Shown here piece by piece: positions 3,701-64,000 of a stretch of DNA of 64,000 bases; the first letter of the stretch is position 1; each line of letters begins with the position of its first letter. Both the position numbers and the translations under genes were made by a program. The DNA lies in assembly GCA_002269645.1 (NCBI GenBank), contig NIVC01001159.1:38257-102256 (forward strand), written 5' to 3'. The notes below the pieces were generated by a model, which saw nothing but the letters and a program-made list of their open reading frames with translations, did no database searches and was not told where the DNA came from. Source of the stretch: Macrostomum lignano (Eukaryota).

Positions 3701-4312
3701 CACTCTCACAGCTCTCTCTTCTTCACTCTCATGGCTCTCTCTTCTTCACTCTCATGGCTCTCTCTTCTTTACTCTCATGGCTCTCTCTTCTTCACTCTCA
3801 CAGCTCTCTCTTCTTCACTCTCACAGCTCTCTCTCCTTCACTCTCACAGCTCTCTCTCCTTCACTCTCACAGCTCTCTCTTCGTCACTCTCACAGCTCTC
3901 TCTTCTTCACTCTCATGGCTCTCTCTTCGTCACTCTCACAGCTCTCTCTTCTTCACTCTCACAGCTCTCTCTTCTTCACTCTCATGGCTCTCTCTTCTTC
4001 ACTCTCATGGCTCTCTCTTCTTCACTCTCATGGCTATCTCTTCTTCACTCTCATGGCTCTCTCTTCTTCACTCTCATGGCTCTCTCTTCGTCACTCTCAC
4101 AGCTCTCTCTTCTTCACTCTCATGGCTCTCTCTTCGTCACTCTCACAGCTCTCTCTTCTTCACTCTCATGGCTCTCTCTTCTTCACTCTCATGGCTCTCT
4201 CTTCTTCACTCTCATGGCTCTCTCTTCTTCACTCTCATGGCTCTCTCTTCTTCACTCTCATGGCTCTCTCTTCTTCACTCTCATGGCTCTCTCTTCTTCA
4301 CTCTCATGGCTC
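795..4312. repeat. 23-bp pyrimidine-rich minisatellite, ~150 copies
   Basis: Unit CTCTCTCTTCTTCACTCTCA(TGG/CAG). It has no stops in the plus frames, which produces the spurious 1100-1270 aa ORFs. Confidence 0.97.
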
Positions 4313-9530: not shown

Positions 9531-10608
9531 CCAAAATGAGTGCCTGCAGTGCCAAAATGAGTGCCTGCAGTGCCAAAATGAGTGCCTGCAGTGCCAAAAT
9601 GAGTGCCTGCAGTGCCAAAATGAGTGCCTGCAGTGCCAAAATGAGTGCCTGCAGTGCCAAAATGAGTGCCTGCAGTGCCAAAATGAGTGCCTGCAGTGCC
9701 AAAATGAGTGCCTGCGGCGCTAAAATGAGTGCCTGCAGTGCCAAAATGAGTGCCTGCAGTGCCAAAATGAGTGCCTGCGGCGCTAAAATGAGTGCCTGCG
9801 GCGCTAAAATGAGTGTATGCGGCGCTAAAATAAGTGCCTGTGGCGCTAAAATGAGTGCCTGCGGCGCTAAAATGAGTGTCTGCGGCGCTAAAATGAGTGT
9901 CTGCGGCGCTAAAATGAGTGCCTGCGGTGCTAAAATGAGTGCCTGCGGCGCTAAAATGAGTGCCTGCGGCGCTAAAATGAGTGTCTGCGGCGCTAAAATG
10001 AGTGTCTGCGGCGCTAAAATGAGTGTCTGCGGCGCTAAAATGAGTGTCTGAGGCGCCAAAATGAGTACCTGCGGCGCTAAAATGAGTGTATGCGGCGCTA
10101 AAATGAGTGTATGCGGCGCTAAAATGAGTGTCTGCGGCGCTAAAATAAGTGTCTGCGGCGCTAAAATGAGTGTCTGAGGCGCCAAAATGAGTACCTGCGG
10201 CGCTAAAATGAGTGTATGCGGCGCTAAAATGAGTGTATGCGGCGCTAAAATGAGTGTCTGCGGCGCTAAAATGAGTGTCTGCGGCGCTAAAATGAATACC
10301 TGCGGCGCTAAAATGAGTGCCTGCGGCGCCAAAATGAGTGTCTGAGGCGCTAAAATGAGTACCTGCGGCGCTAAAATGAGTGTCTGAGGCGCCAGAATGA
10401 ATACCTGCGGCGCTAAAATGAGTGCCTGCGGCGCCAAAATGAGTGTCTGAGGCGCTAAAATGAGTACCTGCGGCGCTAAAATGAGTGTCTGAGGCGCCAG
10501 AATGAATACCTGCGGCGCTAAAATGAGTGTATGCGGCGCTAAATTTAGAGTACCTGCAAAATGAGTGCCTGCGGCGCTAAAATGAGTGCCTGCGGCGCTA
10601 AAATGAGT
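9531..10608. repeat. 21-bp minisatellite (AAAATGAGTG family), ~50 copies
   Basis: Unit AAAATGAGTGCCTGC(AGTGCC/GGCGCT). Related to the array at 58787-59551. Confidence 0.96.
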
Positions 10609-40300: not shown

Positions 40301-40893
40301 TAAAGCTAGTGTCAGGGCTAAAGCTAGTGTCAGGGCTAAAGCTAGTGTCAGGGCTAAAGCTAGTGTCAGGGCTAAAACTAGTGTCAAGGCTAAAGCTAGG
40401 GTCAGGGCTAAAGCTAGTGTCAGGGCTAAAGCTAGTGTCAGGGCTAAAGCTAGGGTCAGGGCTAAAGCTAGTGTCAGGGCTAAAGCTAGTGTCAGGGCTA
40501 AAGCTAGTGTCAGGGCTAAAGCTAGTGTCAGGGTTTTCCTCAGCAGTTGAGCGCCCGTCCTCTCACCCGCCATTACTTTTCCCCGCCGCAGGCGACGTGC
40601 CGCTGCGGCTCCGCCGGTCCCAGCACGGAGAGCGCGGCCACCAGGCGGTGTCAAACGAGTACACGGAGCACCCGCCGCAGGCAGTGGCCTCCTACGCCAC
40701 CCCGCCAGCGGTCCCAGCCGTGATGAGGATCGTCAGCAGCCACTCGTCGGCTCTGGACAGCTGGCAGAGCTGCAGCGCCGATGTGCCCGCCATCGATGAT
40801 GTTGACGAGGACGAGGAAGAGAACCCCGGGATGCACACTCGGCGCGGTCAGCCGATCGGAGACCATCGAGACAATGACTGGAGACACATCTAG
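25385..40893 (+). CDS. Transmembrane semaphorin (signal peptide, Sema, PSI, TM, cytoplasmic tail; class 1/6-like architecture), 10 exons, ~816 aa
   Basis: Manual model: 25385-25502, 25576-25666, 25755-26016, 26309-26653, 26740-26881, 34915-35355, 37304-37631, 38603-38667, 38756-39112, 40592-40893. Phases are consistent; total 2451 nt. Signal peptide MHYKIIIIFSLIVLLTIWSATSSYA. Sema motifs: YLGGFNALYRVS, GEKLYALFVEEA, TRLARICLNDPGG...TSFFKLRLIC, FYGLFS...ALCRFTL, RPRPTLC, VGT|DSGSLIK. PSI: CNRQAGCVACVSLRDPRCSW...C. TM: FVAALIALCLLGFSAGFFLGCFV followed by RRRR. Confidence 0.9.
26045..26270 (+). mobile_element. tRNA-derived SINE with CORE-like central domain (semaphorin intron 3)
   Basis: Pol III A box TAGCGTAGTGG and B box GGTTCGATTCC, then GTCCTTGAGCAAGACACTTAAC...CAGTTCACCCAGCTGTAAAATGGG, which resembles the MIR/CORE domain. 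Two more copies at 59999-60213 and 61286-61423. Confidence 0.8.
26935..27905. repeat. 25-bp minisatellite split in two by a ~470-bp unique insert
   Basis: Unit CCCTTGACATCTCGCCTTAGAATCT at 26935-27110 and 27585-27905. Confidence 0.9.
28805..29415. repeat. 45-bp minisatellite, ~13 copies
   Basis: Unit CTCCCCCTCCCGCTCTATCTATATCTAATCTCATCTCTCTGTCTT. Confidence 0.93.
30118..32275. repeat. 16-bp minisatellite, ~135 copies
   Basis: Unit GCTTGTGACTTTATGA with TCCTGTG/TCTTGTG variants. Confidence 0.97.
32810..33465. repeat. 30/31-bp minisatellite
   Basis: Unit ATCTAC(C)TCTCAGCCTATCTATGATTTCTCA. Confidence 0.93.
34540..34815. repeat. 22-bp minisatellite
   Basis: Unit TTCCATTCCAGGAATCACCCAG. Confidence 0.9.
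35375..35775. repeat. 21-bp minisatellite at the start of semaphorin intron 6
   Basis: Unit GTAGTTGCTATGCG(G/A)GAT(C/G)T(G/A). Confidence 0.9.
36238..37225. repeat. 20-bp minisatellite, ~49 copies
   Basis: Unit TCTCTCTGAGTGTCTCTCAG. Confidence 0.95.
37650..38458. repeat. 22-bp minisatellite (semaphorin intron 7)
   Basis: Unit GGATGCGCTCACCGGGACTTTA. Confidence 0.94.
39165..40533. repeat. Hexamer-based satellite (TCAGGG/CTAGGG/CTAAAG/CTAGTG) in the last semaphorin intron
   Basis: 12- and 18-bp units made of 6-mers; internal 476-bp duplication. Confidence 0.94.
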
Positions 40894-43466: not shown

Positions 43467-43577
43467 TTACGGAAACAATAAATAATATAAAAGATTCCTC
43501 TCGCGAATGGGAAGCAACTTCCGGCTTCCGCGACCGGCCTGAATGAAGATCAACACCTTTGGCTTTCCTTGAAGGAC
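43467..43577 (-). pseudogene. Degenerate caspase fragment with catalytic Cys>Gly (QAGRG), lacking p10
   Basis: Translates VLQGKPKVLIFIQAGRGSRKLLPIRERNLLYYLLFP*. The DNA aligns with the LEGRPKAFFIQACRGS segment at ~53890-53940. It is followed by the same 3' flank that follows the intact caspase. Confidence 0.75.
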
Positions 43578-46106: not shown

Positions 46107-48311
46107 TCACAGCGGCTTCAAAGGCTCGTCGAAGAACTTCTTGTCTTCGTACCTGAAAAAGAAGTGCAGAGTATAAACTCAGAGTGTGGATTTCAAATTG
46201 CACGATAGTTCTTACTGCCCATTTATACTACAAAAATTAAAAAATTCCACTCAGAGCAACTGCAGTCAGCTGCTCAAAATTCAATGATGAGCAATAATGC
46301 TTTTCAGCGATTTCGAGCATAGGTCAGAGAGACATTCTCAGTTGCCATGGAAACTCACCCACGCAGCAGCTCAGCCAGCTCGCTGTTTTCCGTCTGTGTG
46401 GCCAAATCCAGCGCAGTCCTGTCGTCTCTGTCCTTCAGGCTCCAATCCGCCCCTGAGTCCAGCAGAACCCGACCGACTGCGGCGGCGGTAGCGGGGGGCG
46501 CAATGATGGCTGCCAGCATGAGGGGAGTCAATTCACAGTATCCCCGATCAGTCCTGGCATTGGCGGAGGCTCCGGCAGCCAGCAGTGCGGAGGCTGCGGC
46601 AGAATTGCCACCGAAGCCTGCCCAGTGCAGGCAGCTGTCAGACCTTGAATCCACACAGGTGGGGTCACCCAGCTGCACCAGCTGCTCCCACAGAGCCTCA
46701 TTACTGCACGAGCTGTTCCGAGCTGCACACATCAACGCGGTGACACCACATCTGTCAGGCAGGTCGCAGCTGCTGCGGGTCGCCGCTCGCCGCAGTCCAG
46801 CCCAGTCGCCGGCCTCAGCCAGCCGCTTCATTTCCTTTCGATCGACCTTCTCCTGCAAAGGCGAGCGGGAAATTTGAGCACCGCTGCTCTGCTGCAGCTG
46901 CATCGGCACCGCAGATGCCGCTCACCTGAGCTGTCAGGCCAGAGATATAGGCATATTTTTCCACCACCAGCCGCATCTCCCTGCAACCGTAAAATGAGCA
47001 GCGAATTTGCAATTTTATTTATCAGGCAACTACCGTTGCCAAAATAGAATTTACTTTAGTAGGATGAAATTTTCATGATAAATTTAGCAAATACGAGTAG
47101 AAAATCCTAATTATCTGAGCTGCTCGCAGATGAAGATTTTAGGAGAACTGCAGCAGCTCCGCAACAATCAGCATTGGCGAGAGCGCCTATGACTTCTCAC
47201 ACGCAGCTCATTTTCCATTTCTGCAGCACGAGTTTCCTTCCATTTCACAATGTCTCACAAAGCACTCACGCACAGCCTCCCAGTTCTCCATCTGCAGCTC
47301 GACCCACACACTCTCACTGCACACCGAGGCCCTACAGCTTCCATTCTCGACTGAGATCAACCGGACCCCCATTGGCTGAGAGGCTCCCGCCCATCAAGCA
47401 GTCAGCCAGAGACAAGCTCAGCTGACTGGCTCTGATTGGCTGGCCTGAGACTGCAGCTCTGGCCACCCCAGCCGAATGCTGCAAAAATTGATGGACACAG
47501 CAGCGAACTGCTCACTCACCGCTCGATGTAGCTGGCCAGCTCTGAGTAGCCGCTGAGTCTCGCCAGGTCCGACGCCGTCCGACCCTCGCAATTCTGCAGT
47601 CCGAGCAACCGCGACCTCTTCGAGTTTCCGTGCTGCAAGCATTCATTAAACTTCAACTGCCTGAGCAGGTGCAGCAGGTGCTTGGCGCATTTCCAGCTGC
47701 CAGTCCGCGCCGCCTCCATCAGCGGAGTGGCGCCGTTGTCGTTCCGCAGCCACTTCGCATCGAACCACAGCAGCGTCAGCAGCCGCAGGTGGTCCCGCCG
47801 GGCTGCCAGGTGCGCAGCCGTGTCGCCGTTCGCGTCAGCCGCCTTGGGGTTCGCGCCCAGCTTAAATAAGTACAAGATGCACTTTTCAGTGTGCACGGGA
47901 GTCTCAGGAGCGTCGGCCACCAGCATGAGGACGGTCCGACGATTTGCATCAGCGCTGGTGACCAGCTGGCGCGTTGCCAGCCGCCGCACCTGGCCGAAGT
48001 CACCTCGGATGACGTCGTGGGCGAGAGTCTGGAGATCGGCTGGTGAGTCTCCGACGCTTGCCCGGTTGCTGGGGTCCGGCTGAGTGAGTTCCTGCAACTG
48101 TAATTAAGCACTAAAGCTGCACATTGAAACATGTGAGTGAGAACCAAAGATATTTTTCAAATGGATTGCTTTAACTCACAAAAAATAATATTTCAAACAA
48201 AAGAATGCTACAAAACTTACATTCTTACAAATAATCACCCTATGTACAATATAAGGTAAAACTTACCTTGTAATCAGAATAGTATATCACCTTAGAGGCC
48301 GCACTGCCCAT
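46107..48311 (-). CDS. Ankyrin-repeat-only protein (~405 aa), paralog of the ankyrin-caspase without the caspase exons
   Basis: Exons 48311-48267 (MGSAASKVIYYSDYK), 48097-47520, 46980-46926, 46852-46359, a possible 12-nt microexon at 46227-46216, and 46152-46111, with read-through to TGA at 46109-46107. ANK motifs: GDTAAHLAA, GATPLMEAA, GVTALMCAA, TPLMLAA, DRTALDLA. The 3' end is uncertain. Confidence 0.75.
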
Positions 48312-48599: not shown

Positions 48600-49350
48600 A
48601 CAACAAAATACGTGCTCCGCGTCACAGTGCGCGCCTCAAAGGCAGGTCGCGAATGAACGCCCCGCCGCCGACCGAATCTGGGGCGCCGGCGTTAGCCAGC
48701 AGGCAGTCGACGAATCGCCGAGTGCGGGCTTGCCCCCCCCCACCGGTAGGGTGCCTGCAGCGTCATTAGCAGCACCTCCTGCATCGGTTGTGGGAAATAC
48801 GTTCGGCTCGGATGATGTGGAATGCAAGCTGGAGTCGCCGACGGCGCAACAGGTCGCTTGGACGAACCAGGCCGTCATGGTGATAGAAAGCTGCGTTGGT
48901 CACTCGCTCGTTGCCGATCCTGAAGGCAGCGCTTAGCAGGTCAGCGTGCGCCGCGTCAACTTGTTGCTTGCGCAACTCCATCAGCGTCCAGGTCTCGGCG
49001 TTGTACAACAGGACGGTCTCGATCACCGCCTGGAAAAACGCCACCCTCTGGCGGTCAGGTAGGCCCTTGGATTGCAAGACTGCCCTCACAGAATAAAAGG
49101 CAGCCCATGACGTCAAGAACTAGACCGCCGAGGAAGTCGAACTGCTGACAACACGAAAGCTCCGTCGCCGGGCCATCTGCGCCTTGACTCATAAATGCAA
49201 CCTCGATGTCGTCCGGCACGCAGGGCACAACGGTTTTCTGTGTATTGACCACCAGACCGACAGCTTGTACAGTTGTTTCTGGGCGCCCTCGACCGTTCAG
49301 GACAGCAGGACGAGATCGTCAGCGTAGCCAAGCACGCTGAGCCGCCTCTA
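48600..49350 (-). mobile_element. 5'-truncated, decayed RTE-type non-LTR retrotransposon
   Basis: RT motif LGYADDLVLLS followed by an in-frame TGA, frameshifts, and the RTE-typical C-terminal stretch AFFQAVIETVLLYNAETWTL...RRRRLQLAFHIIR. A short (TTG)n run near 48595 may be the tail. Confidence 0.85.
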
Positions 49351-51570: not shown

Positions 51571-53528
51571 GGCAGAATCGCCAGTCCTGGCTGCATGGTG
51601 CAGGCAACTGTTAGCCAATACAATCGCCAAATCCACTTATTGGTCAATGCAAATCTTCAAAATCAAAGAAATATACAGGACATCTATAGCTAGGTGACAT
51701 TGTTCCCAACTCTTGTGCATAATTGCTTTCGTTAGCGGTTCTAAAAAACAATTCTTCAACAGCTGTAGAATAATTGAGTCTAAAAATTTCAATAAATAAG
51801 CATGAATAAGAGTTCCGTTGAAAAATTTATATGCTAGTCTCACTTATAGTAAATACAAAGTTTGTCTGATAATGAATAATGAATTATGATAACGAAATAC
51901 AACGTAAAGACGAGCTACTCACTAAGCAACATGTTACATTTTCCACCCCCGACACGTGCGGCCAACTTTTCTCACATCTCAGCGGTTTTCCTCTCAACTG
52001 TGGGTGATGCAGCTTCCGTCACAATAAGTCCCCAGTTTATTAACCTGATGAGGAGAGACAGGAGAGCTATGACCACAGAGTTGGATTAAGCTCGACCACT
52101 TTCAGTTCTCATGCAGACCTCATGAACGGGTCTCATAAGCAAAAACGTTCTGAAATTAAAAATTGCATGTATGAGTAGATCTCATCTGAGAGTTTTTTTC
52201 TCTATTTGATATCTATCTCAATTGCTTCGATCCTTTGGCCCTCTTAATACATGTATACGTATTATACAGGCTGCCAATCGGGACCCAAAAACCATGCTAC
52301 TTGTAAATTACTGTATCAAGAGCGAGAACGAGAATTTAATCACCTGTAGCACTGCCTGGAGTTGTTTCTTGGGCTCTCGGTGGTTGGGTGCTCATATATG
52401 GAAATTTCCTTTCTCTTGCTCTCTCACTCTGTCAAGCTTTTGTTTTATTGCTCATCCCAGCAGCCTATAAAACCGCGAAAAGCACCGCCTATCTGTATGC
52501 ACCTGGCTCAATGCTAGCTTCTACTTATAAGAACATCGAACTTTTTGCCCTATCGTCCATTTATTTCTTGCATTTTCTGCAAGCCGTTTGCATTTTGCAG
52601 CAAATTTGCGAGCCGTACTTGTCCAGCTAGTGTTTCGTTTAGCTATGAGCGTGAGCAGTCCTGCTCACGGCTCTCTTCATCAGTTTCTCGTACATTTGCA
52701 CGTGTGTTAATTAACAGAATTCATCAATACACCCTCGCTTTGACCACTGACCAGATGTTCCACCTTTTCTGTGTAATCCTTCGTCTCGTCTCTTGTTTAT
52801 ATCTACGCATATTCCTAAACGTTCTAGTTGTCAATTGCCCATAAATGAGTCACCAAGCAAACAACCAGTCCGATTTTGTTTGTAATGTGCAGTTTTTTAG
52901 AGGCGATAAACCTTTAACTACGAGTAACTACCAATTTATTGTACAGAAAACTTGTGATTAATAATTGAACTTTAAATAAGGTAGACACGGTGTTAGAAAC
53001 TTTAAATATAGGAACACAAAAAACAATTAAAAAATCAACCGTAACTGAGTAGCTAAAAATTTAAAGCAGATTAACTTGAGTAGACGTTGGAGCAGATCAA
53101 CAAGTAGCTTACGTGAGCTCTTGGGCTGAAGGGGCAACCCAGCAGTCGGGAAAGCAAAAACTTGAATAAATAATAAAAAAACACGTCGGATCAAAAAAAA
53201 CTTATAAATATAAAAAAATTGCGGCTAAATATGGATAGGCACGGCACACAAAACAGAAGGCTGCAAGTACAGGAAAAGTTCGGTTGCTTGAGTAAACTGG
53301 AGGACAGTGTTTCAGCAGCAAGAACGATTGTTTGTCATAAGATAAACATATCGATTACAAATTTTTAGCTAATTTTCGTGGCTACTGGGCTACATTTGCT
53401 TTGGGTTACAAAGCTGCTACTTTCAATTCTAATTCTAACTCTTCTCAAAGCTACTACTTAGCACGTTGCTGAGTGAATATATAGTGTTGACGTCTCAGAA
53501 ACCGCTAAACAATTTCATTGAGCAGCTT

Positions 53529-54762
53529 TTAAACTTTCTGAGCTTTTTCTGGATCGAAGCTAACAAGTCGTGAAAGCTGGTCGACCTTCTGTGGCACAAC
53601 ATGGTACAGGTTGTTTTTCACCCGAACAGGGTTTTCCTGCAAGTGGCCGCTCACCTTGGTCATGATGGTACTTAGGTCGAGCTCACGGAAGTTTTTCTCG
53701 ATGAAATCGCAAACAGTCTGCACGTACAGCGAACCCGTGTCGATGTTTCTAAAGGCGGCTGAGCCTGGAGTGTTGGCGTAGCAGAGCAGAAAGTCGCTCT
53801 CTGCAGGACGGACCGCGGTGTTGTACACCGGAGCGGGTGCTTCGTCCGTTTCCTCGCGAGAATTGGGAGCAACAACAGCGCGGTCGAGACGGCTTCCGCG
53901 ACAGGCCTGGATGAAGAACGCCTTCGGCCTGCCTTCAAGTCTGCGGCAGACAGAGCTCTGCGATGCGATGACAGTGGCGGTGAGGTTTTTCGTCTTAGAA
54001 ACATGGTATACTGTCTAGTCTCCGCTTCTTTGATGAATTAGATTGAAGGCGTGAGACACGCCTGTTTCAGAACTCAATTCAGAACTCAAAATGAGATTTC
54101 GGCTCTCTCATGCGCTTGTATATTTTTCCGCTAGCGTTCGCTGGCTTCAAGCCCATACCTGTAAAGCGCAAATCCCCCAACATGTCTATGAAAATATTTT
54201 ACGTTAATAAAATGCACTACATGTATTTGTCATCAGTGCCACAAAAGTCTACACAGACTTTTGTAAATGCGAAAACGAGTTCCTACACTCAATATTACCT
54301 TTCGGCTCAATACTATACATTTCTATTCAGAGCCCTTTTTAATATTCCTGTCCTTGCTCATATCAAGATAAAAAACTATCAACAGGATATTCTCGGCGAT
54401 AGCTTACCTGGAACCTGTCTGTCAGCTTTCGAATTTCGTAGGGACAGCCGTCCCTACCGTAGATGCAGTCGTGGCTGCCGTGCGCCATCAGGAAGCAGAC
54501 AAAGCTGCCATGCTCGCCAAGGTCCGGTGACTTTTTTATCTCATGGAGGAAATCATCCACCTGCTCAGCGGTAAGATCCTCTTTTACCTTGACGATGAAG
54601 CGCAGACTCTCGAATACCTGTTTCACTCGTTCAACATCACGAACTGAACCTTTACGCTCGGTATGACTGAATGTGATGTCACTTCCGGAGTCGTACTTGC
54701 TGATGTTGATGATCAGACAGTAGCCTTGCGGGTCCGTCACTGGATAGAAGTCTCCCTCCACC
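53529..54762 (-). CDS. Caspase (peptidase C14A) catalytic domain exons of the ankyrin-caspase
   Basis: GYCLIINISKY, ERKGSVRD (S1 Arg), FVCFLMAHG (catalytic His), GRPKAFFIQACRG (catalytic Cys; QACRG at 53895-53909), and p10 PAESDFLLCYANTPGSAAFRNIDTGSLYVQ. One phase-0 intron at 54407-53994. Confidence 0.95.
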
Positions 54763-57700
54763 CTGGAATACAGTGAATGCTCAATACATTTTTTACGAGC
54801 TCGTACTTTAACAGCGCAAAACATAAAATTTAGTATCACCTTGACAGCTGATGGCGAGCGGTTTTGACACGCATGGCTCCTCCGAAGTCTCCAAAAGTTC
54901 TTTTAAGTGAAAAACAACAATTTGACTATGCTGTTACTGAATATTTGTGGCATGCTTTGCCTGATGACTAAATAAAACTTCGACTCACAGATCTGGTTCC
55001 TCATCGCTTGGTATCTCGTCATCAGCATGGTCTGTAAAAACTTTTCGTCTGAAAAGGTAAAAAAGCCATGCAGTTTTCGTAGCTGTGTGCTGTAGCTGTG
55101 TGTTGTAGCTGTGTGCTGTAGCTGTGTGCTGTAGCTGTGTGCTGTAGCTGTGTGCTGTAGCTGTGTGCTGTAGCTGTGTGCTGTAGCTGTGTGCTGTAGC
55201 TGTGTGTGCTGTAGCTGTGTGTGCTGTAGCTGTGTGCTGTAGCTGTGTGCTGTAGCTGTGTGCTGTAGCTGTGTGCTGTAGCTGTGTGTGCTGTAGCTGT
55301 GTGCTGTAGCTGTGTGTGCTGTAGCTGTGTGCTGTAGCTGTGTGTGCTGTAGCTGTGTGCTGTAGCTGTGTGTGCTGTAGCTGTGTGTGCTGTAGATGTG
55401 TGCTGTAGCTGTGTGCTGTAGCTGTGTGCTGTAGCTGTGTGTGCTGTAGCTGTGTGCTGTAGCTGTGTGTGCTGTAGCTGTGTGTGCTGTAGCTGTGTGC
55501 TGTAGCTGTGTGTGCTGTAGCTGTGTGTGGTGTAGCTGTGTGTGCTGTAGATGTGTGCTGTAGCTGTGTGCTGTAGCTGTGTGCTGTAGCTGTGTGTGCT
55601 GTAGCTGTGTGCTGTAGCTGTGTGTGCTGTAGCTGTGTGCTGTAGCTGTGTGCTGTAGCAGTGTGCTGTAGCTGTGTGTGCTGTAGCTGTGTGTGCTGTA
55701 GCTGTGTGCTGTAGCTGTGTGCTGTAGCTGTGTGTGCTGTAGCAGTGTGCTGTAGCTGTGTGCTGTAGCAGTGTGCTGTAGCTGTGTGCTGTAGCTGTGT
55801 GTGCTGTAACTGTGTGTGCTGTAGCTGTGTGCTGTAGCTGTGTGCTGTAGCTGTGTGTGCTGTAGCTGTGTGCTGTAGCAGTGTGCTGTAGCTGTGTGCT
55901 GTAGCAGTGTGCTGTAGCTGTGTGTTGTAGCTGTGTGCTGTAGCAGTGTGCTGTAGCAGTGTGCTGTAGAAGTGTGTGCTTAGTGTGCAGTGTCTGCGCT
56001 TGAGCTGAAGAAACTCACCGTGGCTCCGAAGACTCGTCAAAGTACTTCTTGCCTTCGTACCTGAAATTGATTTGGATAGTTTGAATCAAGACTTTGGCTG
56101 ATATTTTGTTTTCACGTGAGTATTTAGGAACTCAACAGCAGATTTCTGATTTCAAGATGGGATTCAGGGTCTCGAAACAAACTCATTTTTTACATAGATT
56201 TTATATTAAGCCGTAAATTTTGAATTTTATCTTTAAATTGAAGATTTTGCTTAGATTTATCAGCAATAAAGTTATAAAGTTATCAACTGGCAATCTGCAG
56301 TCAAACTGCACTGCAAACTTCCTCAATGCAGCTCAGTCAGTCCCTGCTGCCCATTTGGACTACAATAATTAAAAAATTCCCACTCAGAGCAACTGCCGTC
56401 AGCTGCTCAATATTCAATCATAAATTACAGCAATAGTGTTTATCAATCGGGATAAATCAAAGTCAAAGAGAAATTCTCAGTCGCCATGGAAACTCACCCA
56501 CGCAGCAGCTCAGCCAGTTCGCTCTTTCCCTTCTCTGTGGCCAAATCCAGCGCAGTCTCGCCGTTTATGTCCTTCAGGCTCCAATCCGCCCCTGAGTCCA
56601 GCAGAACCCGACCGACTGCGGCGGCGGTGGCGGGGGGCGCATGGATGGCTGCCTGCATGAGAGGCGTAGATTCCATTCCACTCGTGGCATTTGCGGAGAC
56701 TCCGACAGCCAGCAGAGCGGAGGCTGCGGCAGAATTTCCAGCGCTGGCTGCGTGGTGGAGGCAACTTTTATCATAAAAATCTGCCAATGTAGGGTCTCCC
56801 ATATGCACCAGCTGCTCCCACAGAATCTCATCACAGCAGGACCTGTTTTGAGCTGCCCACATCAACGCGGTGCAACCATATTGGTCAGGCAGGTCGCAGC
56901 TGCTGCGGGTCGCCGCTCGCCGCAGCGCCGCCATTAAGCCCTTATCGGCCAGCCGCCGCAGTTCCTGTCGATCCGACTTCTCCTGCAAAGGCGAGTGGGA
57001 AATTTGAGCACAGCTGCTCAGTTGCAGCTGCATCGCCACTGCAGATGCCACTCACCTTGGCTATCAGGCCGGAGATAAAGCTATGTCTATCCACAACCAG
57101 CCGCATCTCCCTGAAACAGCAGAATTGAGCAGCGAATTTGCAATTTTCTCAAATCTGGCAACTCACATAGCTATATTATAATAAAATTTTATGATAATTT
57201 TCATGATATTTGTCAACAGAAATTCTAAATAATGTGAGCTGCTCGCGAATGGACTTTCCAAGAGCCCTCAAGCACAGCCTCCCAGTTCTCCATCTGCAGC
57301 TCAACCCACACACTCTCACTGCACACCGAGGCCCTACAGCTTCCATTCTTGACTGAGATCAACCCGCATCCCGTTGGCTGGAAGGCAGCTCTCGCCCATC
57401 AAGCAGTCAGCCAGAGACAAGCTCAGCTCAGCGAACTGCTCACTCACCGCTCGATGTAGCTGGTCAGCTCTAAGTGGCCGTTGCGCCTCGCCAGGTCCGA
57501 CGCCGAGTGTAAATTGCGATCGCACAGTTTGAGTAGCTCCGACCTCTTCGAGTCTTCGTAGATAGTGGACTCATTGAACCTTCTCTGCCTGAGCAGGTGC
57601 AGCAGGTGCTTGGCGCATTTCCAGCTTCCAGTTCGCGCCGCCTCCATCAGCGGAGTGGCGCCGTTGTCGTTCCGCAGCCACTTCGCATCGAACGATAGCA

Positions 57701-58321
57701 GCGTCAGCAGCCGCAGGTGGTCCCGCCGGGCTGCCAGGTGCGCAGCCGTGTCGCCGTTCGCGTCAGCCGCCTTGAGGTTAACGCCCTTCTCAAATAAGTA
57801 CAAGATGCACTTTTCAGTGTGCACGGGAGTCTCAGGAGCGTCGGCCACCAGCATGAGGACGGTCCGACGATCTGCATCAGCGCTGGTGACCAGCTGGCGC
57901 GTTGCCAGCCGCCGCACCTTGCCGAAGTCACCTCGGCTGACGAGCTGGGCGAGAGTGTGGAGATCGGCTGGTGAGTCTCCGACGCTTGTACGGTTGCTGG
58001 GGTCCGGCTGAGTGAGTTCCTGCAACTGCAATGGAGGCACCTGGCTTTTAGAACCAGAAAAAGGGTATAGAACTCCGGGGTATTGTCGTTTTTTATCCTG
58101 TTGAATGAGGTTAAGGATTACACGTCGAAATGGTCGAGGTAGATTCCATGGAAGAGAAATACGTGTCCATTATGAGCGCTACTGTCGCGACTTATAATAA
58201 GGATACGGTCTAAAGCTACAGACCTACAGTTTATAGTTCTTGTTTTACTGCAAATGTACCAACAGCTAATAGTAATTTATTAGCTCACCGTGTTATTCAG
58301 AGAGGAGGCCGCACTGCCCAT
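53529..58321 (-). CDS. Ankyrin-repeat caspase: myristoylation-type N-terminus, two ANK clusters, acidic linker, caspase p20/p10; 9 exons, ~715 aa
   Basis: Exons 58321-58289, 58040-57448, 57110-57056, 56982-56498, 56060-56019, 55048-54989, 54899-54840, 54762-54408, 53993-53529. All introns are GT-AG and the phases chain without a stop; total 2148 nt. The exon 2 acceptor could also be 58025 or 58019 (same phase). Confidence 0.78.
55079..55980. repeat. 13/15-bp minisatellite in an ankyrin-caspase intron
   Basis: Unit GCTGTGTG(TG)CTGTA. Confidence 0.95.
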
Positions 58322-58786
58322 TATTCGCACTTCAACCAGTTTTTCTCCACTCAGGCCGGAAAGCAAAATGCATGAGCAGTCGACCCTAGGCAACAGATTA
58401 TATATCGCCCTCAGAAGACATTGTCAAAGAGATGCCTGATTGGCCTAATGCAAAGCCGGTGCCTCGGTTTAGGGTTTATCTGTCATACAGAATGCATACT
58501 ACTTACGGCAGTAGACACCCTCTAGGCAAATGAAGATCATCGTTGCAAAATTATTTTTTATTTCGTACAAATCAACAAATTTTCTGGCTTCTTCCACTAA
58601 AATTGCATGATTTTTTTTGGTAAATGCAAGACTTACCTTCTAAAAATAAGCACAATGTTTGTAATTAGTGACAGACACACAGAGACTAAGAGCTGAAATA
58701 ATGGAAATGAGGAGAGATATGCCTCTAAGGTTTTGTCGTTACGAGTATATACATGCCATTGCTTGAAATGGCGCAAAATGAGTTAT

Positions 58787-59551
58787 TGCATTGCCAAAAT
58801 GAGTGACTGCTGTGCCAAAATGAGTGACTGCTGTGCCAAAATGAGTAACAGCTGTGCCAAAATGAGTAACAGCTGTGCCAAAATGAGTGACTGCTGTGCC
58901 AAAATGAGTGACTGCTGTGCCAAAATGAGTAACAGCTGTGCCAAAATGAGTAACAGCTGTGCCAAAATGAGTGACTGCTGTGCCAAAATGAGTGACTGCT
59001 GTGCCAAAATGAGTGACTGCTGTGCTAAAATGAGTGACTGCTGTGCTAAAATGAGTGACTGCTGTGCCAAAATGAGTGACTGCTGTGCCAAAATGAGTGA
59101 CTGCTGTGCTAAAATGAGTGACTGCTGTGCTAAAATGAGTGACTGCTGTGCCAAAATGAGTGACTGCTGTGCCAAAATGAGTGACTGCTGTGCCAAAATG
59201 AGTGACTGCTGTGCCAAAATGAGTAACAGCTGTGCCAAAATGAGTAACAGCTGTGCCAAAATGAGTGACTGCTGTGCCAAAATGAGTGACTGCTGTGCCA
59301 AAATGAGTGACTGCTGTGCTAAAATGAGTGACTGCTGTGCTAAAATGAGTGACTGCTGTGCCAAAATGAGTGACTGCTGTGCCAAAATGAGTGCCTGCTG
59401 TGCCAAAATGAGTGACTGCTGTGCCAAAATGAGTGACTGCTGTGCCAAAATGAGTGCCTGCTGTGCCAAAATGAGTGACTGCTGTGCCAAAATGAGTGAC
59501 TGCTGTGCCAAAATGAGTGCCTGCTGTGCTAAAATGAGTGACTGCTGTGCT
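58787..59551. repeat. 21-bp minisatellite (AAAATGAGTG family), ~36 copies
   Basis: Unit AAAATGAGTGACTGCTGTGCC. Confidence 0.96.
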
Positions 59552-59998
59552 GTGCAACAACCCCAGGATTTCCAAAAATATGGGTAACTTTTTGGTTTGG
59601 AACTGGTGGCTTTGCACCCCTTACGCCATAAAGTCCAAGGCAACTCCCCTTCTGCAGCTATATTGTTGGTATAGAAATTTTTTTCAAAAATGCAGGACCC
59701 ATTAGAAGTAATTTTTCTGACTCTGTTTCAGCCGTGTTACCCATAGGCTGTTTTTATTAAAAATCATCAATAACAGTATTCGCATGCATTGCTTCATTAC
59801 AAAAGACATTTTGAAAGAGGAGAGGATGCGGAATATGATTTTCATATTCTAGTCTAATCTTTCTTCTGCTTAAGAATTTCTTGGCTATCATAGTACTCGA
59901 AATAATCAATAATGATTTATTAAACATGCCCTAATGGCCAGATGTGCAACCGACAGCTCAGCCGCAGCTATTGCGCGGCGCATCTGAAGGTTGCGTAC

Positions 59999-60213
59999 GG
60001 CTGTTCAATCCAAGGACTGGGGGGGGGGGGTCGCCACACATACCCTCAATTACCCCAGCTAATGCTCGCACCCATTTTACAGCTGGGTGAACTGAAGCAA
60101 TGCAGAGTTAGGTGTCTTGCTCAATGACACAAATTGTTCCGAGTGGGATCAGGAATCGAACCCCCGACCTTCAGGCCGTGAGTCCGACGCTGTAACCACT
60201 AGGCTACAACCCC
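59999..60213 (-). mobile_element. tRNA-derived CORE-like SINE, second copy
   Basis: The reverse complement aligns over ~215 bp with 26045-26270. Confidence 0.82.
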
Positions 60214-61285
60214 ACTCTTCAAATACACCAAACCGTTTAACTTCCACCTTTGCATAGCTCTGTGCCTGCTTGGAAATATTTCAAACAGGAAAAGGGGTCA
60301 GTTTATCCCCTAGACAAAGAATTCTGGAGCAATGCTGAGCTCTGCTCTTTCAAACAAGATCGGTGCTTTTTCGTTTTGGAAGACATCAAATGCAGTACAG
60401 AATTTCAGCTATTCAGGCTGACCGCATCTGCACAAACTCTGCCACTTTGCTTAACAAAAATGCTGCATGAGCTGCTCTAAAACTGAGCCGTCTTTCAGAA
60501 CAGAAAAAATATTTTTGCCACTAAATATAGAAACTGAAACACGCAGTGCAGAATGCTGCTTATAGAGGGGCATGGCAGCTGCGCACACTGCAGCAGCTCC
60601 AGATTCGAGTTTAAAGACAGACAATTGCATGCAGAAGAGAGTTAAATGAAGGGGCTGAAACACACTGGGGAGGTGCAGTGGAGGTGTAGAAGATAAAATT
60701 CGAATAGGAAAGAGTGGAGAAGAGGAGGAAGACTGAATGGCCTTGTTTTTGAAATGGAAAAATAATTCACTGATAAATTTAGAAACCGAAACACAGAGCG
60801 TCTGTAGGGGTGAGTTGAGGGTGAAAATAGACGATTGGTACAGACGGCTGTAATAAATATATAAAATTGTCAAATCTTTACTTCACCTTCACCTTTAATT
60901 TACTTCAAATCCAGATAGAATGTCCAGATAAAATAGCCAGATAGAAGACTCTAAAATGAGGGCGCCAAAATGAGTGACTGAGGCGCAAAAACTAAATATT
61001 GACAAGCTCAATTTACAAAAATATGGGTAATTTTTTGCTTCGAACTGTTGGATTTGCATCGCCTCCGCCAAAAAATTCATGGCAACTTCCCTGCCGATGT
61101 TTTACGAGCGTACTGTTGGTATGAAGATTCTTATCAAAGATGACTTATTAAAGTCATCACTTCTTCATTGCAGAAGACATTTTGAAAGAGGAGAGGATTC
61201 GGATTATGATTTTCATACTCTAGTCTAATATTCCTTCTGCTCAAGAAATTTTAGGCTGTCATAGTAAATCAATAATAGTTGATTA

Positions 61286-61423
61286 CATTTTACAGCTGGG
61301 TGAACTGAAGCAATGCAGAGTTGAGTATCTTGCTCAAGGAAACAAATTGTTCCAGTGAGATTGGGACTCAAACCCTCGACCTTAAAGTCGTGAGTGTGAC
61401 GCTCTAACAACTAGGCTAAAACC
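61286..61423 (-). mobile_element. tRNA-derived CORE-like SINE, 3'-truncated third copy
   Basis: Head and core only; lies within the local duplication of the 59.5-60.9 kb segment. Confidence 0.78.
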
Positions 61424-64000
61424 TCATTAAATACACCAAACCGTTTAACTTTCACCTTTGCATAGCTCCGTGCCAGTTTGGAAACATTTCAAACAGGAAA
61501 AGGGGTCAGTTTATCCCCTAGAGAAAGAATTCTGGAGCAATGCTGAGCTCTGTTCTTTCAATCAAATGCAGTACAGAATTTCAGCTATTCAGGCTGACCG
61601 CATCTGCACAAACTCTGCCACTTTGCTTAACAAAATATGCTGCATGAGCTGCTTTAAAACTTCAGAACAGAAAATATATATTTGTCTGAATGGCCTTGTT
61701 TTCGAAATTGAAAAATAATTCTGTGATAAATCTAGAAACCGAAACACAGAGCGTCTGTAGGGGTGAGTTGCAGGTTGAGGTTTGAGGTTGCGGTGGAGGT
61801 GGGGGGAGAGAAAACTCCAGATAGAATGAGTCGAAAAGACGAGGGAGGCTGAATGGCCTTGTTTTCGAAACTGAAAAATAATTCACTGATAAATTTAGAA
61901 ACCGAAACACAGAGCGTCTGTAGGGGTGAGTTGGGGGTGAAAATGGACGATTGGGCATAAACAGAAGGCATTAAAATTATTTAAATTCCCAAGTATTTAC
62001 CACACTACTTATAGTATTAGTCGCAGTTCATTATTGATCAAATTTTGTAATTTTGTTTAACCTCTGACTTGAAAAACATTACCCTGCATCTTGATAGATT
62101 ATACCGATACGAGCTAGAATATCCAGATAGATTATCTAATAGAAAACACAATCGGCTAAGGACTTCGTCACTCTGTCCAAATTCGGTTGTAGCCATAGAC
62201 ATGGATAGTGCTCGGCCTTCTTAAGCCCTCGATCGGTGGTAGTCGTCAGGCCTAGGAGCAAAGAAATCAATCACTTATTGAATACTCTGGCCTCTCAATT
62301 CTATCAGATGGTCTGCCCTCGGGCAGCTGAGATGTGGGCAAGCAGAACAGCACAGACCCTGTGGCTAAGAGAAGACAGCAAGAGACAACCAGCAGGGAGA
62401 CTTTTAAAGGTAGAGATTAGCTAATCCGGAGATTTGGCTAACCCATGCCGCCACCAAACTGGCTCTAGAACTAATTTGCAAACTACAGCTGTTATAAGTG
62501 ACACTGCTGGGACTGGATCGCTGTCCAATCTAAAGATTTAAGGGTCGCTAGCAAGTCTCTCTACACCGCTCAGTGTACTATTACATTATTGACTTCCCGT
62601 GAAAGTACATCTACATGCATTTTGACGCTTCTCCACGACTCTAAAGAACGCATAGCGCTGAATGGGGTTTTGCAATAGACAATTTTGACTGAAGAAAATC
62701 CGACTCGTGCGTTCTTAGATGACCTATCCCTCGACACATCCATCAGATGCCATCACCCACATAGTCTGCCCGAGATAGACCTCTGACACCAGTGAATCTT
62801 CCTACTTCTGACTAAGCTGGAGCACTCAGAGAGAGCAACGCATCCAGTTAATGCAGACAAAATTCGTACTCATTTCTAACTGAGTAGTTTCATTCTCCTC
62901 TCCGTATTTCACGCACTCATGGTTCGAGCCCTTTTGGAAATATCTCAAACAGGAGAATTCTATAGGCTTGCCAACATGAGAATTTGTGTCCTAAAACTAT
63001 TTTACATGGCCCAGAGCAATGCCCATCTATTTTGGAAAGCGCTGTAGATTAAAACACAATGGATGAGCCAGTGCTTTTTCAAGGCCGAAAGAGCCTGTAT
63101 ATGCAATGCACAGTCTTCTCTGCAAAAGCTCTGCCCTCACTTTTGTTCAACAATGGCATTAGAAATAGGCGAACTGAGCAAATGCTGGGCAGCTGCATGG
63201 CTGAGTAATGAATTCAGGGTGCTCAAAACTCCACTCAGTTGTACGGGTGGCCAATTCGTATGGGCCCGGCTCAAGTGGCGGGCTTCTTGTGGTCATTGCC
63301 AATCTGTCTTTAGTCTCAGCAGGGTCTGTTGCAAAGCGTTTTTCTACCTGCATGTGGAATCTGTGCCACCCACCTGCTTAATACTCGCGACTGATGCAGG
63401 TGTAACTAAATAAAAAACTTGACAAATATGCATTTAGCATACTTTAAGTATCGATTCTCAATCCTTCAACTTTCTACGAGAAAACTGACATTTAATTAAA
63501 ACCGTTTGTGTTTTGGTGCTGAGCTTATAGTAGGATAAAGGGCGGGGCAGGCTTTAAAAAAACAGATTATGAGAACAGGGGCCCGTGCTATACAGCACTC
63601 TTAACTGCTTAACAAGCTTGCATGAAGTCGAAAATCGTGGAAGAGACTGAAGTACAAGGACGGACCGTCTGCAGAGTACGTAGCTCCGGTATGTGCTGCG
63701 ACCCCACTGCGTTCCCAAGGCTTCAAAAATAAAGATATGACAACGCGGGCACCGCAATCTCGGGCATTGAGTCTCTGAGGTGCGCAAACAAATATATGCT
63801 AAATCTCTTCATCAGCTTGAGCAGTCTCACAAAAGTGTACAGAGAAGATTGAGTGCTGGCTTGCATATATTAAATATATAAAATACAAAAATCTGTTCCG
63901 AAATTTCAAGGATATGAAACAAAAATAACTCAAAGCATAGAGAAAACACAGAAATTTCAGAAAAAGAGAAAAGGACAGTATAGTATTAGGAACCACCTCA

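What the first reader, a model, noticed from the sequence alone, without database searches (positions are those of the whole stretch)
53529..58321. Ankyrin-repeat caspase: ANK clusters spliced in frame to an intact caspase
Seen in the sequence: nine same-strand exons with GT-AG introns whose phases chain without a stop from MGSAAS through two ankyrin clusters and three short linker exons into a caspase domain retaining MAHG, QACRG and both S1 arginine motifs (ERKGS, AAFR). The ORF track splits this into unrelated pieces, so the fusion is easy to miss. Established knowledge: initiator caspases normally carry death-fold prodomains (CARD or DED). Ankyrin repeats are versatile binding modules but are not a standard caspase prodomain. 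Inference: an Asp-specific caspase recruited or activated through ankyrin-mediated recognition rather than a death fold, i.e. a one-component sensor-protease. I am not aware of a characterised example but cannot exclude one.
Basis: partly seen in the sequence, partly recalled or inferred. Interest (0 to 1): 0.92.

Follow-up and report, generated by a model that had tools for sequence, protein, structure and literature searches.

The report
Flatworm caspase with ankyrin-repeat prodomain
This is a real gene of the free-living flatworm Macrostomum lignano that joins an ankyrin-repeat module to an intact caspase, but the exact protein is already in GenBank and "ANK caspases" of flatworms were already described in 2014 and 2024, so it is a new member of a known, still uncharacterised, class.

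Summary
Nine minus-strand exons (58321..53529), all with GT-AG introns, give a stop-free 698-aa protein. It has an N-terminal MGSAAS, two ankyrin blocks, a disordered acidic linker and a complete caspase domain (R474, H532, C575, R626).

The protein is identical to GenBank PAA71516.1 (BOX15_Mlig015407g1, Macrostomum lignano). That annotation was built from RNA-seq transcript assemblies, so the ANK-to-caspase junctions already have transcript-derived support.

"ANK caspases" are a published flatworm class (Lee 2014; Horkan 2024, PMC11463336), although none has been studied biochemically.

Some points are modestly new:
- Horkan 2024 states that ANK caspases are restricted to parasitic flatworms. 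M. lignano is free-living and has about a dozen.
- This gene falls in a Macrostomum-only clade.
- Its ~385-aa ankyrin module is about 75% identical to modules fused to MAP3K-like kinases, and it also occurs alone.
- A Cys-to-Gly pseudo-caspase paralog exists.
- Two of the three near-identical genomic copies are truncated before the active site.

Most likely function: an initiator-type zymogen recruited through its ankyrin module. The "one-component sensor" idea is untested.

The parts
58398..58443 (-). Putative core promoter: CCAAT (58443-58439) and TATATAA (58404-58398), about 80-120 nt upstream of the ATG
   Evidence: Consensus matches read directly from the sequence. The tandem paralog has TATATAA at the equivalent place (48387-48381), and the two upstream regions align at 73%. 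This is consensus resemblance only and was not tested.
58289..58321 (-). Exon 1: start codon and MGSAASSLNNT; fits the N-myristoylation consensus (G2, S6)
   Evidence: The same start is used in PAA71516.1. The neighbour paralog starts MGSAASK, P0003 has MGSGSS and P0022 has MGSWFS. Myristoylation is inferred from the PROSITE-type motif (own knowledge).
57448..58025 (-). Exon 2: first ankyrin block (residues 12-204)
   Evidence: Pfam Ank_2/Ank_4/Ank at 83-154. AlphaFold helix-pair repeats over 30-207 with pLDDT above 90.
57056..57110 (-). Exon 3: short connector between the two ankyrin blocks (residues 204-222, EMRLVVDRHSFISGLIAK)
   Evidence: It is conserved in paralogs (EMRLVV...). AlphaFold predicts a short hairpin at about 208-216.
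56498..56982 (-). Exon 4: second ankyrin block (residues 223-384), ending ...AELLRG
   Evidence: Pfam Ank_3 at 294-320 and Ank_5 at 328-370. AlphaFold helix pairs over 221-383.
56019..56060 (-). Exon 5 (42 nt): last exon of the ANK cassette (YEGKKYFDESSEPR). Reading through its donor gives an immediate TGA, so retaining intron 5 would yield an ANK-only protein.
   Evidence: Sequence cgG|TGA. ANK-only paralogs P0004 and P0008 end exactly here. ANK-kinase paralogs P0005 and P0006 continue from here into a kinase domain.
55079..55976 (-). Minisatellite filling intron 5 (13/28-bp unit, about 65/33 copies)
   Evidence: Tandem Repeats Finder, score 1313. The partial database models P0073 and P0075 start inside its translation.
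54989..55048 (-). Exon 6 (60 nt): acidic linker (RKVFTDHADDEIPSDEEPDL) with Asp-X candidate cleavage sites (D407, D417)
   Evidence: AlphaFold pLDDT is about 30 over 397-440.
54840..54899 (-). Exon 7 (60 nt): linker (TFGDFGGAMRVKTARHQLS). Exons 5-7 are all multiples of 3, so they can be skipped in frame.
   Evidence: Database models P0076, P0074 and P0017 join ...AELLRG directly to the caspase exon. The A-run 54865-54862 is where the third genomic copy (P0351) is frameshifted.
54408..54762 (-). Exon 8: N-terminal part of caspase p20, with S1 Arg474 (54656-54654) and catalytic His532 (54482-54480)
   Evidence: Pfam Peptidase_C14, alignment to caspase-3, coordinates. Codon 499 (54581-54579, GAG) is TAG in the allelic contig NIVC01003438.1.
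53529..53957 (-). Exon 9: QACRG with catalytic Cys575 (53903-53901), disordered intersubunit loop with EETD594 (53846-53844), p10 with S1 Arg626 (53750-53748), and stop TAA
   Evidence: Between the two haplotype copies this exon has 9 synonymous and 2 non-synonymous differences.
46107..48311 (-). Tandem paralog, ANK-only (397 aa, MGSAASK...DEPLKPL*). It is collinear with exons 1-5 of the main gene, then jumps to the main gene's 3' flank.
   Evidence: tblastn finds no kinase or caspase exons downstream.
43522..43575 (-). Relic of a caspase active-site exon (LQGKPKVLIFIQAGRGSR) downstream of the ANK-only paralog
   Evidence: blastn gives 81% over 53 nt to exon 9. tblastn gives E=0.008 and the translation. 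It carries the same Cys-to-Gly change as P0002.

Best explanation
The locus is a transcribed protein-coding gene of Macrostomum lignano (BOX15_Mlig015407g1). It encodes a 698-aa procaspase whose prodomain is a roughly 385-aa ankyrin-repeat module instead of a CARD or DED.

Shown:
- The layout is: MG start; two ANK blocks (about 10 helix pairs); a flexible acidic linker of about 45 residues, encoded by three small in-frame cassette exons; p20 with Arg474 and His532; QACRG with Cys575; a disordered intersubunit loop; and p10 with Arg626.
- The caspase domain has a caspase-3/7/8 fold.
- The gene belongs to a Macrostomum-specific expansion of ANK caspases.

Inferred mechanism:
- The protein is an initiator-type zymogen.
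- The ANK module, probably membrane-tethered by N-myristoylation of Gly2, docks it onto a partner or scaffold that is not yet known.
- Crowding there drives dimerisation of the caspase domains. Autocleavage follows at EETD594|E in the intersubunit loop, and possibly at Asp407 or Asp417 in the linker, which would free the active protease from its anchor.
- Nearly the same ANK module (about 75% identity) is also fused to MAP3K-like kinases, occurs alone, and occurs on a Cys-to-Gly pseudo-caspase. The module therefore probably acts as a common recruitment domain of one signalling hub. In vertebrates DED/CARD/DD domains play that role by linking caspases, kinases, cFLIP and decoys.
- This particular gene copy may be dispensable, because two of the three near-identical genomic copies are truncated before the active site.
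For: Gene and splicing:
- The exon chain is stop-free with GT-AG introns.
- The translation is identical to PAA71516.1.
- The GenBank annotation of NIVC01 derives from a genome-guided RNA-seq transcriptome assembly.

Domains and fold:
- Pfam finds Ank_2 at 2e-25 and Peptidase_C14 at 1.6e-45.
- The AlphaFold model has mean pLDDT 84.7, with the only disordered stretches at 1-6, 397-440 and 581-608.
- Foldseek matches caspase-7/3/8 with target TM-scores of 0.87-0.91.

Catalytic and S1 residues:
- They align to caspase-3 R64, H121, C163 and R207.
- They are invariant across ten M. lignano relatives.

Selection:
- Exon 9 shows 9 synonymous against 2 non-synonymous differences between haplotypes.

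Family:
- Twelve 90%-identity clusters combine Ank and Peptidase_C14, about 18 combine Ank and Pkinase, and about 12 are Ank-only. All are M. lignano.
- The junction lies exactly at the exon-5 donor.
- The kinase of P0005 is closest to ASK1/MAP3K5.
- P0002 and P0017 carry QAGRG.
- The gene groups with M. lignano paralogs only (bootstrap 81, rough NJ tree).
- The nearest non-Macrostomum caspases are about 30-35% identical and are mostly named caspase-8.

Literature:
- ANK caspases are proposed as initiators sister to DED caspases (PMC11463336).
Against: - No biochemical or expression data for this gene were available to me, and no ANK caspase has been assayed.
- Ankyrin repeats do not normally self-assemble as death folds do, so the activating platform is hypothetical.
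- The allelic contig carries a nonsense codon at 499. The third copy carries a frameshift at about codon 431.
- Exons 7-8 show 5 non-synonymous changes against 1 synonymous change between haplotypes.
- The neighbouring paralog has lost its caspase exons. The caspase moiety of this sub-family may therefore be under relaxed constraint.
- Retention of intron 5 would give an ANK-only product. The relative abundance of the isoforms is unknown.
- Myristoylation and the cleavage sites are motif-level predictions.
Confidence: 0.6

Rival explanations
1. One-component sensor-protease. The ANK solenoid directly binds a danger-, pathogen- or damage-derived ligand. Binding by itself relieves autoinhibition or clusters the protease, with no adaptor.
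For: The family is expanded and lineage-specific, with many divergent ANK modules (40-90% identity). Copy number and presence/absence vary between haplotypes. These are features often seen in innate-immune receptor families. No CARD, DED or DD is present anywhere in the protein.
Against: Almost the same ANK module (about 75% identity) sits on kinases and on ANK-only proteins. That fits a shared docking partner better than private ligand sensing. AlphaFold shows no confident contact between ANK and caspase; the linker is disordered. No ligand is known.
Confidence: 0.15
2. The locus mainly functions as an ANK-only or regulatory gene. Its caspase half is decaying, so the intact ORF in this copy is a transient state on the way to the ANK-only condition seen next door.
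For: The allele in NIVC01003438.1 has GAG>TAG at codon 499. Copy Mlig015407g2 is frameshifted at the A-run in exon 7. Exons 7-8 show 5 non-synonymous changes against 1 synonymous. The neighbour paralog has deleted the effector block and keeps only a relic QAGRG fragment. Read-through at exon 5 gives a stop.
Against: The window copy is fully intact, with every catalytic residue. Exon 9 shows 9 synonymous against 2 non-synonymous differences. A full-length transcript-derived model exists. The homopolymer frameshift could be a long-read assembly error. The DV1 line carries extra chromosome copies, so redundant copies can decay without loss of function.
Confidence: 0.15
3. Annotation chimera. An ANK gene and a separate short-prodomain caspase gene lie head to tail and are only joined by read-through or by the assembler.
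For: About 7% of assembled M. lignano transcripts are polycistronic precursors resolved by trans-splicing. An in-frame Met (M426) exists in exon 7. Some database models are caspase-only (P0073, P0075, P0078).
Against: The caspase-only models P0073 and P0075 have no Met and begin inside the translated intron-5 minisatellite, so they are 5'-truncated. The same ANK-linker-caspase order, in frame, is kept in paralogs down to 40% identity (P0003, P0016, P0023). The linker exons have compatible phases. The TBONE pipeline was designed to cut polycistrons, yet it kept this as one gene.
Confidence: 0.05

Closest known systems
ANK caspases of parasitic platyhelminths (Horkan et al. 2024, Genome Biol Evol, PMC11463336; first noted in Schistosoma by Lee et al. 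2014, Trends Parasitol)
   Same: Same phylum and same architecture: ankyrin repeats as the N-terminal pro-domain of a p20/p10 caspase, with no DED or CARD. They are proposed to be initiators with an unknown ANK-mediated activator, are related to caspase-8-like (DED) caspases, and are not functionally characterised.
   Different: The paper states that ANK caspases are restricted to parasitic flatworms and absent from free-living ones. This gene is from free-living M. lignano. In my rough tree it sits in a Macrostomum-only clade. A different M. lignano ANK caspase (P0203, with canonical ANK repeats) pairs with a cestode caspase next to caspase-8/10. The ANK module here does not detectably match P0203's by phmmer. 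I could not retrieve a Schistosoma ANK caspase for direct comparison.
M. lignano 'protein kinase-like pro-domain' caspase (reported in PMC11463336; most likely the P0158 / PAA47029.1 type, 1060 aa)
   Same: Same species. It carries the same kind of ANK module (phmmer 5e-45 to this gene's module) and a related caspase domain (38% identity).
   Different: P0158 has ANK, then Pkinase (452-726), then caspase (819-1044). The window gene lacks the kinase.
Vertebrate DED caspases (caspase-8/10) and cFLIP
   Same: Long-prodomain caspases. Caspase-8 is among the best sequence and structure matches. An XEXD-type site (EETD) lies in the intersubunit loop. A paralog with the same prodomain but a dead active site (P0002, QAGRG) parallels cFLIP-L, and ANK-only paralogs parallel DED/CARD-only decoys.
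   Different: The prodomain is an ankyrin solenoid, not a death fold. FADD and DED caspases are reported lost in (parasitic) platyhelminths. Homotypic filament assembly is not expected for ANK repeats.
Caspase-3/7 (closest solved structures, e.g. 2J32, 1F1J)
   Same: About 30-35% identity. The fold matches (target TM-score 0.87-0.91), and the R/H/C/R active-site set is the same.
   Different: Executioners have short prodomains. This protein has a 440-residue N-terminal extension.
ANK-plus-kinase signalling proteins (ILK, TNNI3K type; here the M. lignano ANK-MAP3K-like paralogs P0005/P0006)
   Same: An N-terminal ANK module followed by a kinase. The paralogs share about 75% identity with this gene's ANK module and the same exon-5 junction.
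   Different: The effector domain is a STE/MAP3K-like kinase (closest to ASK1) instead of a caspase.

Membership tests
Caspase (peptidase family C14A) | Peptidase_C14 domain above the curated threshold | tested here: met
   PF00656: 156 bits against a cut-off of 21.4, E=1.6e-45, residues 451-664.
Caspase (peptidase family C14A) | Catalytic His-Cys dyad with the QACxG pentapeptide | tested here: met
   His532 in MAHG and Cys575 in QACRG align to caspase-3 H121 and C163. Both are invariant in ten relatives.
Caspase (peptidase family C14A) | S1 pocket for Asp: two Arg plus the Gln of QACxG | tested here: met
   Arg474 (ERKGS), Gln573 and Arg626 (AAFR) align to caspase-3 R64, Q161 and R207.
Caspase (peptidase family C14A) | Caspase alpha/beta fold with p20 and p10 separated by a flexible intersubunit loop | tested here: met
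   AlphaFold is confident over 445-580 and 609-698, with a disordered loop at 581-608. Foldseek to caspase-7/3/8 gives target TM-scores of 0.87-0.91.
Caspase (peptidase family C14A) | Asp-specific proteolytic activity and autoprocessing | not testable with these tools
   This needs recombinant enzyme. The only evidence here is a candidate site, EETD594|E.
Ankyrin-repeat proteins | Several tandem 33-residue helix-turn-helix repeats | tested here: met
   Ank_2 at 2.1e-25 with four stretches, and the Ank, Ank_3, Ank_4 and Ank_5 models all above their cut-offs. About 10 helix pairs with pLDDT above 90. DARPin fusions appear among the Foldseek hits.
ANK caspases sensu Horkan et al. 2024 | Ankyrin pro-domain N-terminal to the p20/p10 domains in one polypeptide | tested here: met
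   (identical to the transcript-derived PAA71516.1).
ANK caspases sensu Horkan et al. 2024 | Member of the monophyletic ANK-caspase clade that is sister to DED caspases | tested here: inconclusive
   In a rough NJ tree (251 columns, 100 bootstraps) the window gene is in a Macrostomum-only clade (bootstrap 81). P0203 plus a cestode caspase (bootstrap 97) sit beside caspase-8/10 (bootstrap 68). Deeper nodes are unsupported. No neodermatan ANK-caspase sequence could be retrieved.
ANK caspases sensu Horkan et al. 2024 | Restricted to parasitic platyhelminths (as stated in the paper) | tested here: not met
   The host is free-living M. lignano. This is a claim about taxon distribution rather than a structural criterion. 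Its failure argues for revising the claim, not for excluding the gene.
Initiator (apical) caspases | Long pro-domain that mediates recruitment | tested here: met
   About 440 residues precede the catalytic domain, and about 385 of them form a folded interaction module.
Initiator (apical) caspases | Activation by induced proximity or dimerisation on a platform, and cleavage of downstream executioners | not testable with these tools
   No partner or substrate data are available.
Death-fold (CARD/DED/DD) caspases | A CARD, DED or DD in the pro-domain | tested here: not met
   No death-fold family appears in the Pfam scan at E<=0.01. The model shows ANK repeats only.

The most novel reading that the evidence does not exclude
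M. lignano, a free-living early-branching flatworm, may have built a lineage-specific cell-death or stress signalling hub. In it one N-myristoylated ~385-aa ankyrin cassette (exons 1-5) would replace death-fold domains as the common recruitment module. By exon-block swapping at a single donor site, the cassette is attached to caspases, to MAP3K-like kinases and to a kinase-caspase tandem. It also occurs on a Cys-to-Gly pseudo-caspase (cFLIP-like) and on ANK-only decoys. This would show that ANK caspases predate parasitism and are not an adaptation to it, contrary to the 2024 proposal.
Probability: 0.3. Interest if true: 0.6.

Novelty: new member of a known kind. Interest (0 to 1): 0.3.

Why it matters
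Taken alone, the gene is an already deposited hypothetical protein of an already named class, so the headline claim ('unknown caspase architecture') falls.

What remains useful:
1. It contradicts a specific published statement, that ANK caspases are confined to parasitic flatworms and linked to the establishment of parasitism. A free-living macrostomid has about a dozen.
2. M. lignano has working transgenesis and RNAi. It is therefore probably the best system in which to do the first functional study of any ANK caspase, including finding the unknown ANK-binding activator.
3. The same ANK cassette is shared among caspase, kinase, pseudo-caspase and decoy-like paralogs. This gives a concrete, testable picture of how a non-death-fold recruitment domain could organise a death or stress pathway.

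Tried and rejected
- Retrieving a Schistosoma or other neodermatan ANK caspase for a proper phylogeny. All three word-indexed homolog searches and the exhaustive HMMER search of representatives returned ANK-plus-caspase proteins from M. lignano only. The only flatworm outgroups obtained were a Sparganum caspase without a detectable ANK (P0269) and a Calicophoron caspase-3-like protein. Orthology with the published clade therefore stays open.
- Supplementary tables of PMC11463336 are not held. Lee et al. 2014 is not held.
I used the exact-sequence cluster look-up instead.
- I searched for kinase or caspase exons downstream of the neighbouring paralog by tblastn with 42 family members. None turned up except an 18-residue relic.
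- I considered that the top hits (P0105-P0114) might be close relatives. They are proteins with tandem caspase domains, or DED or Ras fusions, whose scores are inflated by repeated domains.
- I considered the 57-nt GT..AG segment inside exon 8 that model P0076 uses as an intron (54587-54531). I rejected it as the functional form because it removes a conserved helix that aligns to caspase-3 and is kept in all paralogs.
- The chimera / two-gene reading is rejected as unlikely (see rivals).

Full report
**1. What is there**

There are nine exons: 58321-58289, 58025-57448, 57110-57056, 56982-56498, 56060-56019, 55048-54989, 54899-54840, 54762-54408 and 53957-53529. All eight introns are GT...AG and the phases are compatible. 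The 2097-nt CDS gives 698 aa with one terminal stop.

Pfam finds ankyrin repeats (Ank_2 2.1e-25, four stretches; Ank, Ank_3, Ank_4 and Ank_5 all above threshold) between residues 83 and 370. It finds Peptidase_C14 at 451-664 (E=1.6e-45) and no death-fold domain. Intron 5 is almost entirely a 13/28-bp minisatellite (55079-55976). That produces the spurious 351-aa ORF in the mechanical ORF list.

**2. Whose gene it is, and whether it is transcribed**

The window is Macrostomum lignano DNA. The 698-aa translation is identical, residue for residue, to GenBank PAA71516.1 / UniProt A0A267FCN3. That record is 'hypothetical protein BOX15_Mlig015407g1' on a 524,930-bp contig of GCA_002269645.1.

The paper describing that assembly states how the GenBank annotation was produced. 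It came from a genome-guided transcriptome assembly (StringTie/TACO on RNA-seq plus a de novo transcriptome), with gene boundaries cut by trans-splicing and poly(A) evidence (PMC5730564).

Independent support comes from paralogs. The order ANK, linker, caspase is kept in frame in proteins down to 40-50% identity (P0002, P0003, P0016, P0023).

**3. Anatomy**

An AlphaFold model built on 42 family sequences has mean pLDDT 84.7. It shows:
- a confident helical-repeat region at 30-390, with about five helix pairs per block and a short hairpin from exon 3 between the blocks;
- a disordered segment at 397-440, which corresponds to the three small linker exons 5-7;
- a confident caspase domain at 445-698, interrupted by a disordered loop at 581-608.

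Foldseek against the PDB returns caspase-7, -3 and -8 with target TM-scores of 0.87-0.91. The sequence search of the PDB gives caspase-3 at 9e-35 and caspase-8 at 1.8e-33. In the printed alignment, Arg474, His532, Cys575 (QACRG) and Arg626 pair with caspase-3 R64, H121, C163 and R207. These residues are invariant in an alignment of ten M. lignano relatives.

The disordered loop contains EETD594|E, an XEXD-type candidate site for intersubunit cleavage. The acidic linker contains DHAD407 and DEEPD417.

The N-terminus MGSAAS fits the N-myristoylation consensus (own knowledge of the motif). MGS starts recur in the neighbouring paralog, in P0003 and in P0022. CCAAT and TATATAA elements lie 80-120 nt upstream, and the TATATAA is conserved in the paralog.

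**4. Family context**

The searches returned ANK-plus-caspase proteins from M. lignano only:
- about 12 clusters with Ank plus Peptidase_C14;
- about 18 clusters with a roughly 75%-identical ANK module plus a protein kinase;
- about 12 ANK-only clusters.

These counts are inflated by the redundancy of the DV1 assembly and by the presence of two gene sets.

The module boundary is exact. ANK-only proteins end right after the exon-5 equivalent (...YFDEPxxxP). ANK-kinases continue from the same point into a kinase that is closest to ASK1/MAP3K5 among solved structures. In the window gene, reading through the exon-5 donor gives cgG TGA, so retaining intron 5 would yield an ANK-only isoform.

Exons 5-7 are 42, 60 and 60 nt long. 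Three database models (P0076, P0074, P0017) join ...AELLRG directly to the caspase exon, so the linker exons may be cassette exons.

M. lignano also has:
- an ANK-kinase-caspase protein (P0158, domains confirmed). This is probably the 'protein kinase-like pro-domain caspase' mentioned in the literature;
- a Ras/Roc-caspase (P0108);
- a caspase with canonical ANK repeats (P0203);
- a paralog with QAGRG in place of QACRG (P0002 and P0017).

**5. Haplotypes and neighbours**

Contig NIVC01003438.1 is a 98.9%-identical second copy. It is identical to the window from about 62000 to about 55000 and diverges by 2-8% downstream of about 54900. That pattern suggests a recombination or gene-conversion boundary inside the gene.

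This second copy has GAG>TAG at codon 499, which explains the 498-aa P0001. Differences from the window are 1 synonymous and 5 non-synonymous in exons 7-8, but 9 synonymous and 2 non-synonymous in exon 9. A third copy (P0351) is frameshifted in the exon-7 A-run. Only the window copy keeps an intact caspase.

About 10 kb downstream on the same strand lies a tandem paralog (48311-46107) that is ANK-only. It is collinear with exons 1-5 and then jumps to the main gene's 3' flank, so a block of about 2.9 kb carrying exons 6-9 is missing. An 18-residue relic, '...FIQAGRGSR', survives at 43575-43522. The alternative haplotype carries a further paralog (P0002) that is absent from the window.

**6. Comparison with what is known**

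Horkan et al. 2024 (PMC11463336) describe 'ANK caspases'. [quoted passage not shown] They were first seen in Schistosoma (Lee et al. 2014), are proposed to be initiators with an unknown ANK-based activator, and are not functionally studied.

The paper states that they are restricted to parasitic platyhelminths (plus one annelid case) and absent from free-living ones. For M. lignano it reports only a kinase-pro-domain caspase sister to the ANK clade. The architecture is therefore not new, but the taxonomic statement is contradicted by this locus and its paralogs.

In my rough NJ tree the window gene lies in a Macrostomum-only clade (bootstrap 81). P0203 pairs with a cestode caspase (bootstrap 97) beside vertebrate caspase-8/10 (bootstrap 68). 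Deeper nodes are unresolved, and I could not obtain neodermatan ANK-caspase sequences. Whether this sub-family shares the origin of the published clade or is a second fusion remains open.

**7. Mechanism**

Shown: the gene, its splicing, its domains, the intact active site, the flexible linkers, and the shared ANK cassette.

Inferred: an initiator-type zymogen, probably membrane-anchored, is recruited through the ANK module to a common partner. It is activated by proximity-driven dimerisation and by cleavage at D594 and in the linker. ANK-kinases act as co-recruited effectors, and ANK-only and QAGRG paralogs act as possible competitors.

Progressive loss of the caspase half in this sub-family is a real alternative for this particular locus.

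**8. Verdict**

The finding is a new member of a known kind, and the gene itself is already in GenBank. Interest is modest (0.3). Its value lies in correcting the 'parasite-only' claim and in pointing to a genetically tractable species for the first functional work on ANK caspases.

Noticed in passing
window 46107-48311 (minus strand): A tandem paralog encodes a 397-aa ANK-only protein (MGSAASK...DEPLKPL*). It is collinear with exons 1-5 of the caspase gene, then continues into sequence homologous to the caspase gene's 3' flank. A block of about 2.9 kb holding exons 6-9 is absent.
   Followed up: yes
window 43522-43575 (minus strand): A relic of a caspase active-site exon (LQGKPKVLIFIQAGRGSR). 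It carries the same Cys-to-Gly change as the pseudo-caspase paralog P0002. The flank 43492-42162 is 98% identical to the 3' flank of the P0002 gene on contig NIVC01003438.1. This suggests a large deletion or unequal crossover between haplotypes.
   Followed up: partly
L001 (NIVC01003438.1) versus window 51583-63268; codon 499 = window 54581-54579: The second genomic copy is identical to the window for about 7 kb (62000-55000). It then abruptly becomes 2-8% divergent from about 54900 onward and carries GAG>TAG at codon 499. The sharp switch looks like a gene-conversion or recombination breakpoint inside the gene.
   Followed up: partly
window 54862-54865 (A-run in exon 7); protein P0351: A third genomic copy (BOX15_Mlig015407g2) reads ...MRVKPLAISCQGWRETSIQ*. 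That is a 1-nt deletion in the AAAA run, which truncates the protein before the caspase domain. It could be a real allele or a long-read homopolymer error.
   Followed up: no
window 55079-55976 (intron 5): A 13/28-bp minisatellite (about 65 copies) fills the intron. It generates a 351-aa artefactual ORF, and the 5'-truncated database models P0073 and P0075 ('Caspase-3') start inside its translation.
   Followed up: yes
window 54531-54587 (inside exon 8): A 57-nt GT...AG segment is used as an intron in database model P0076. Splicing it out would delete 19 residues (VKEDLTAEQVDDFLHEIKK) of a conserved p20 helix. It is probably a prediction artefact or a non-productive minor isoform.
   Followed up: partly
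window 58774-59550, 810-4616, 9490-10437, 39234-40654 and others: The window is rich in long, highly regular minisatellites (21-bp, 18-bp and other units). Each yields long repeat 'ORFs' in several frames on both strands. One (58774-59550) lies directly upstream of the caspase gene's promoter region.
   Followed up: no
window 48766-49116 (minus strand): An ORF between the two ANK genes looks to me like the C-terminal part of a non-LTR retrotransposon reverse transcriptase (...FFQAVIETVLLYNAETWTL...). I recognised it by eye and did not scan it.
   Followed up: no
proteins P0158, P0108, P0203, P0193 (other M. lignano loci): M. lignano encodes further unusual caspases: ANK-Pkinase-caspase (1060 aa, three loci), Ras/Roc-caspase (757 aa), a canonical-ANK caspase that UniProt names 'Caspase-8' (599 aa), and a seven-repeat ANK caspase (654 aa).
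   Followed up: partly
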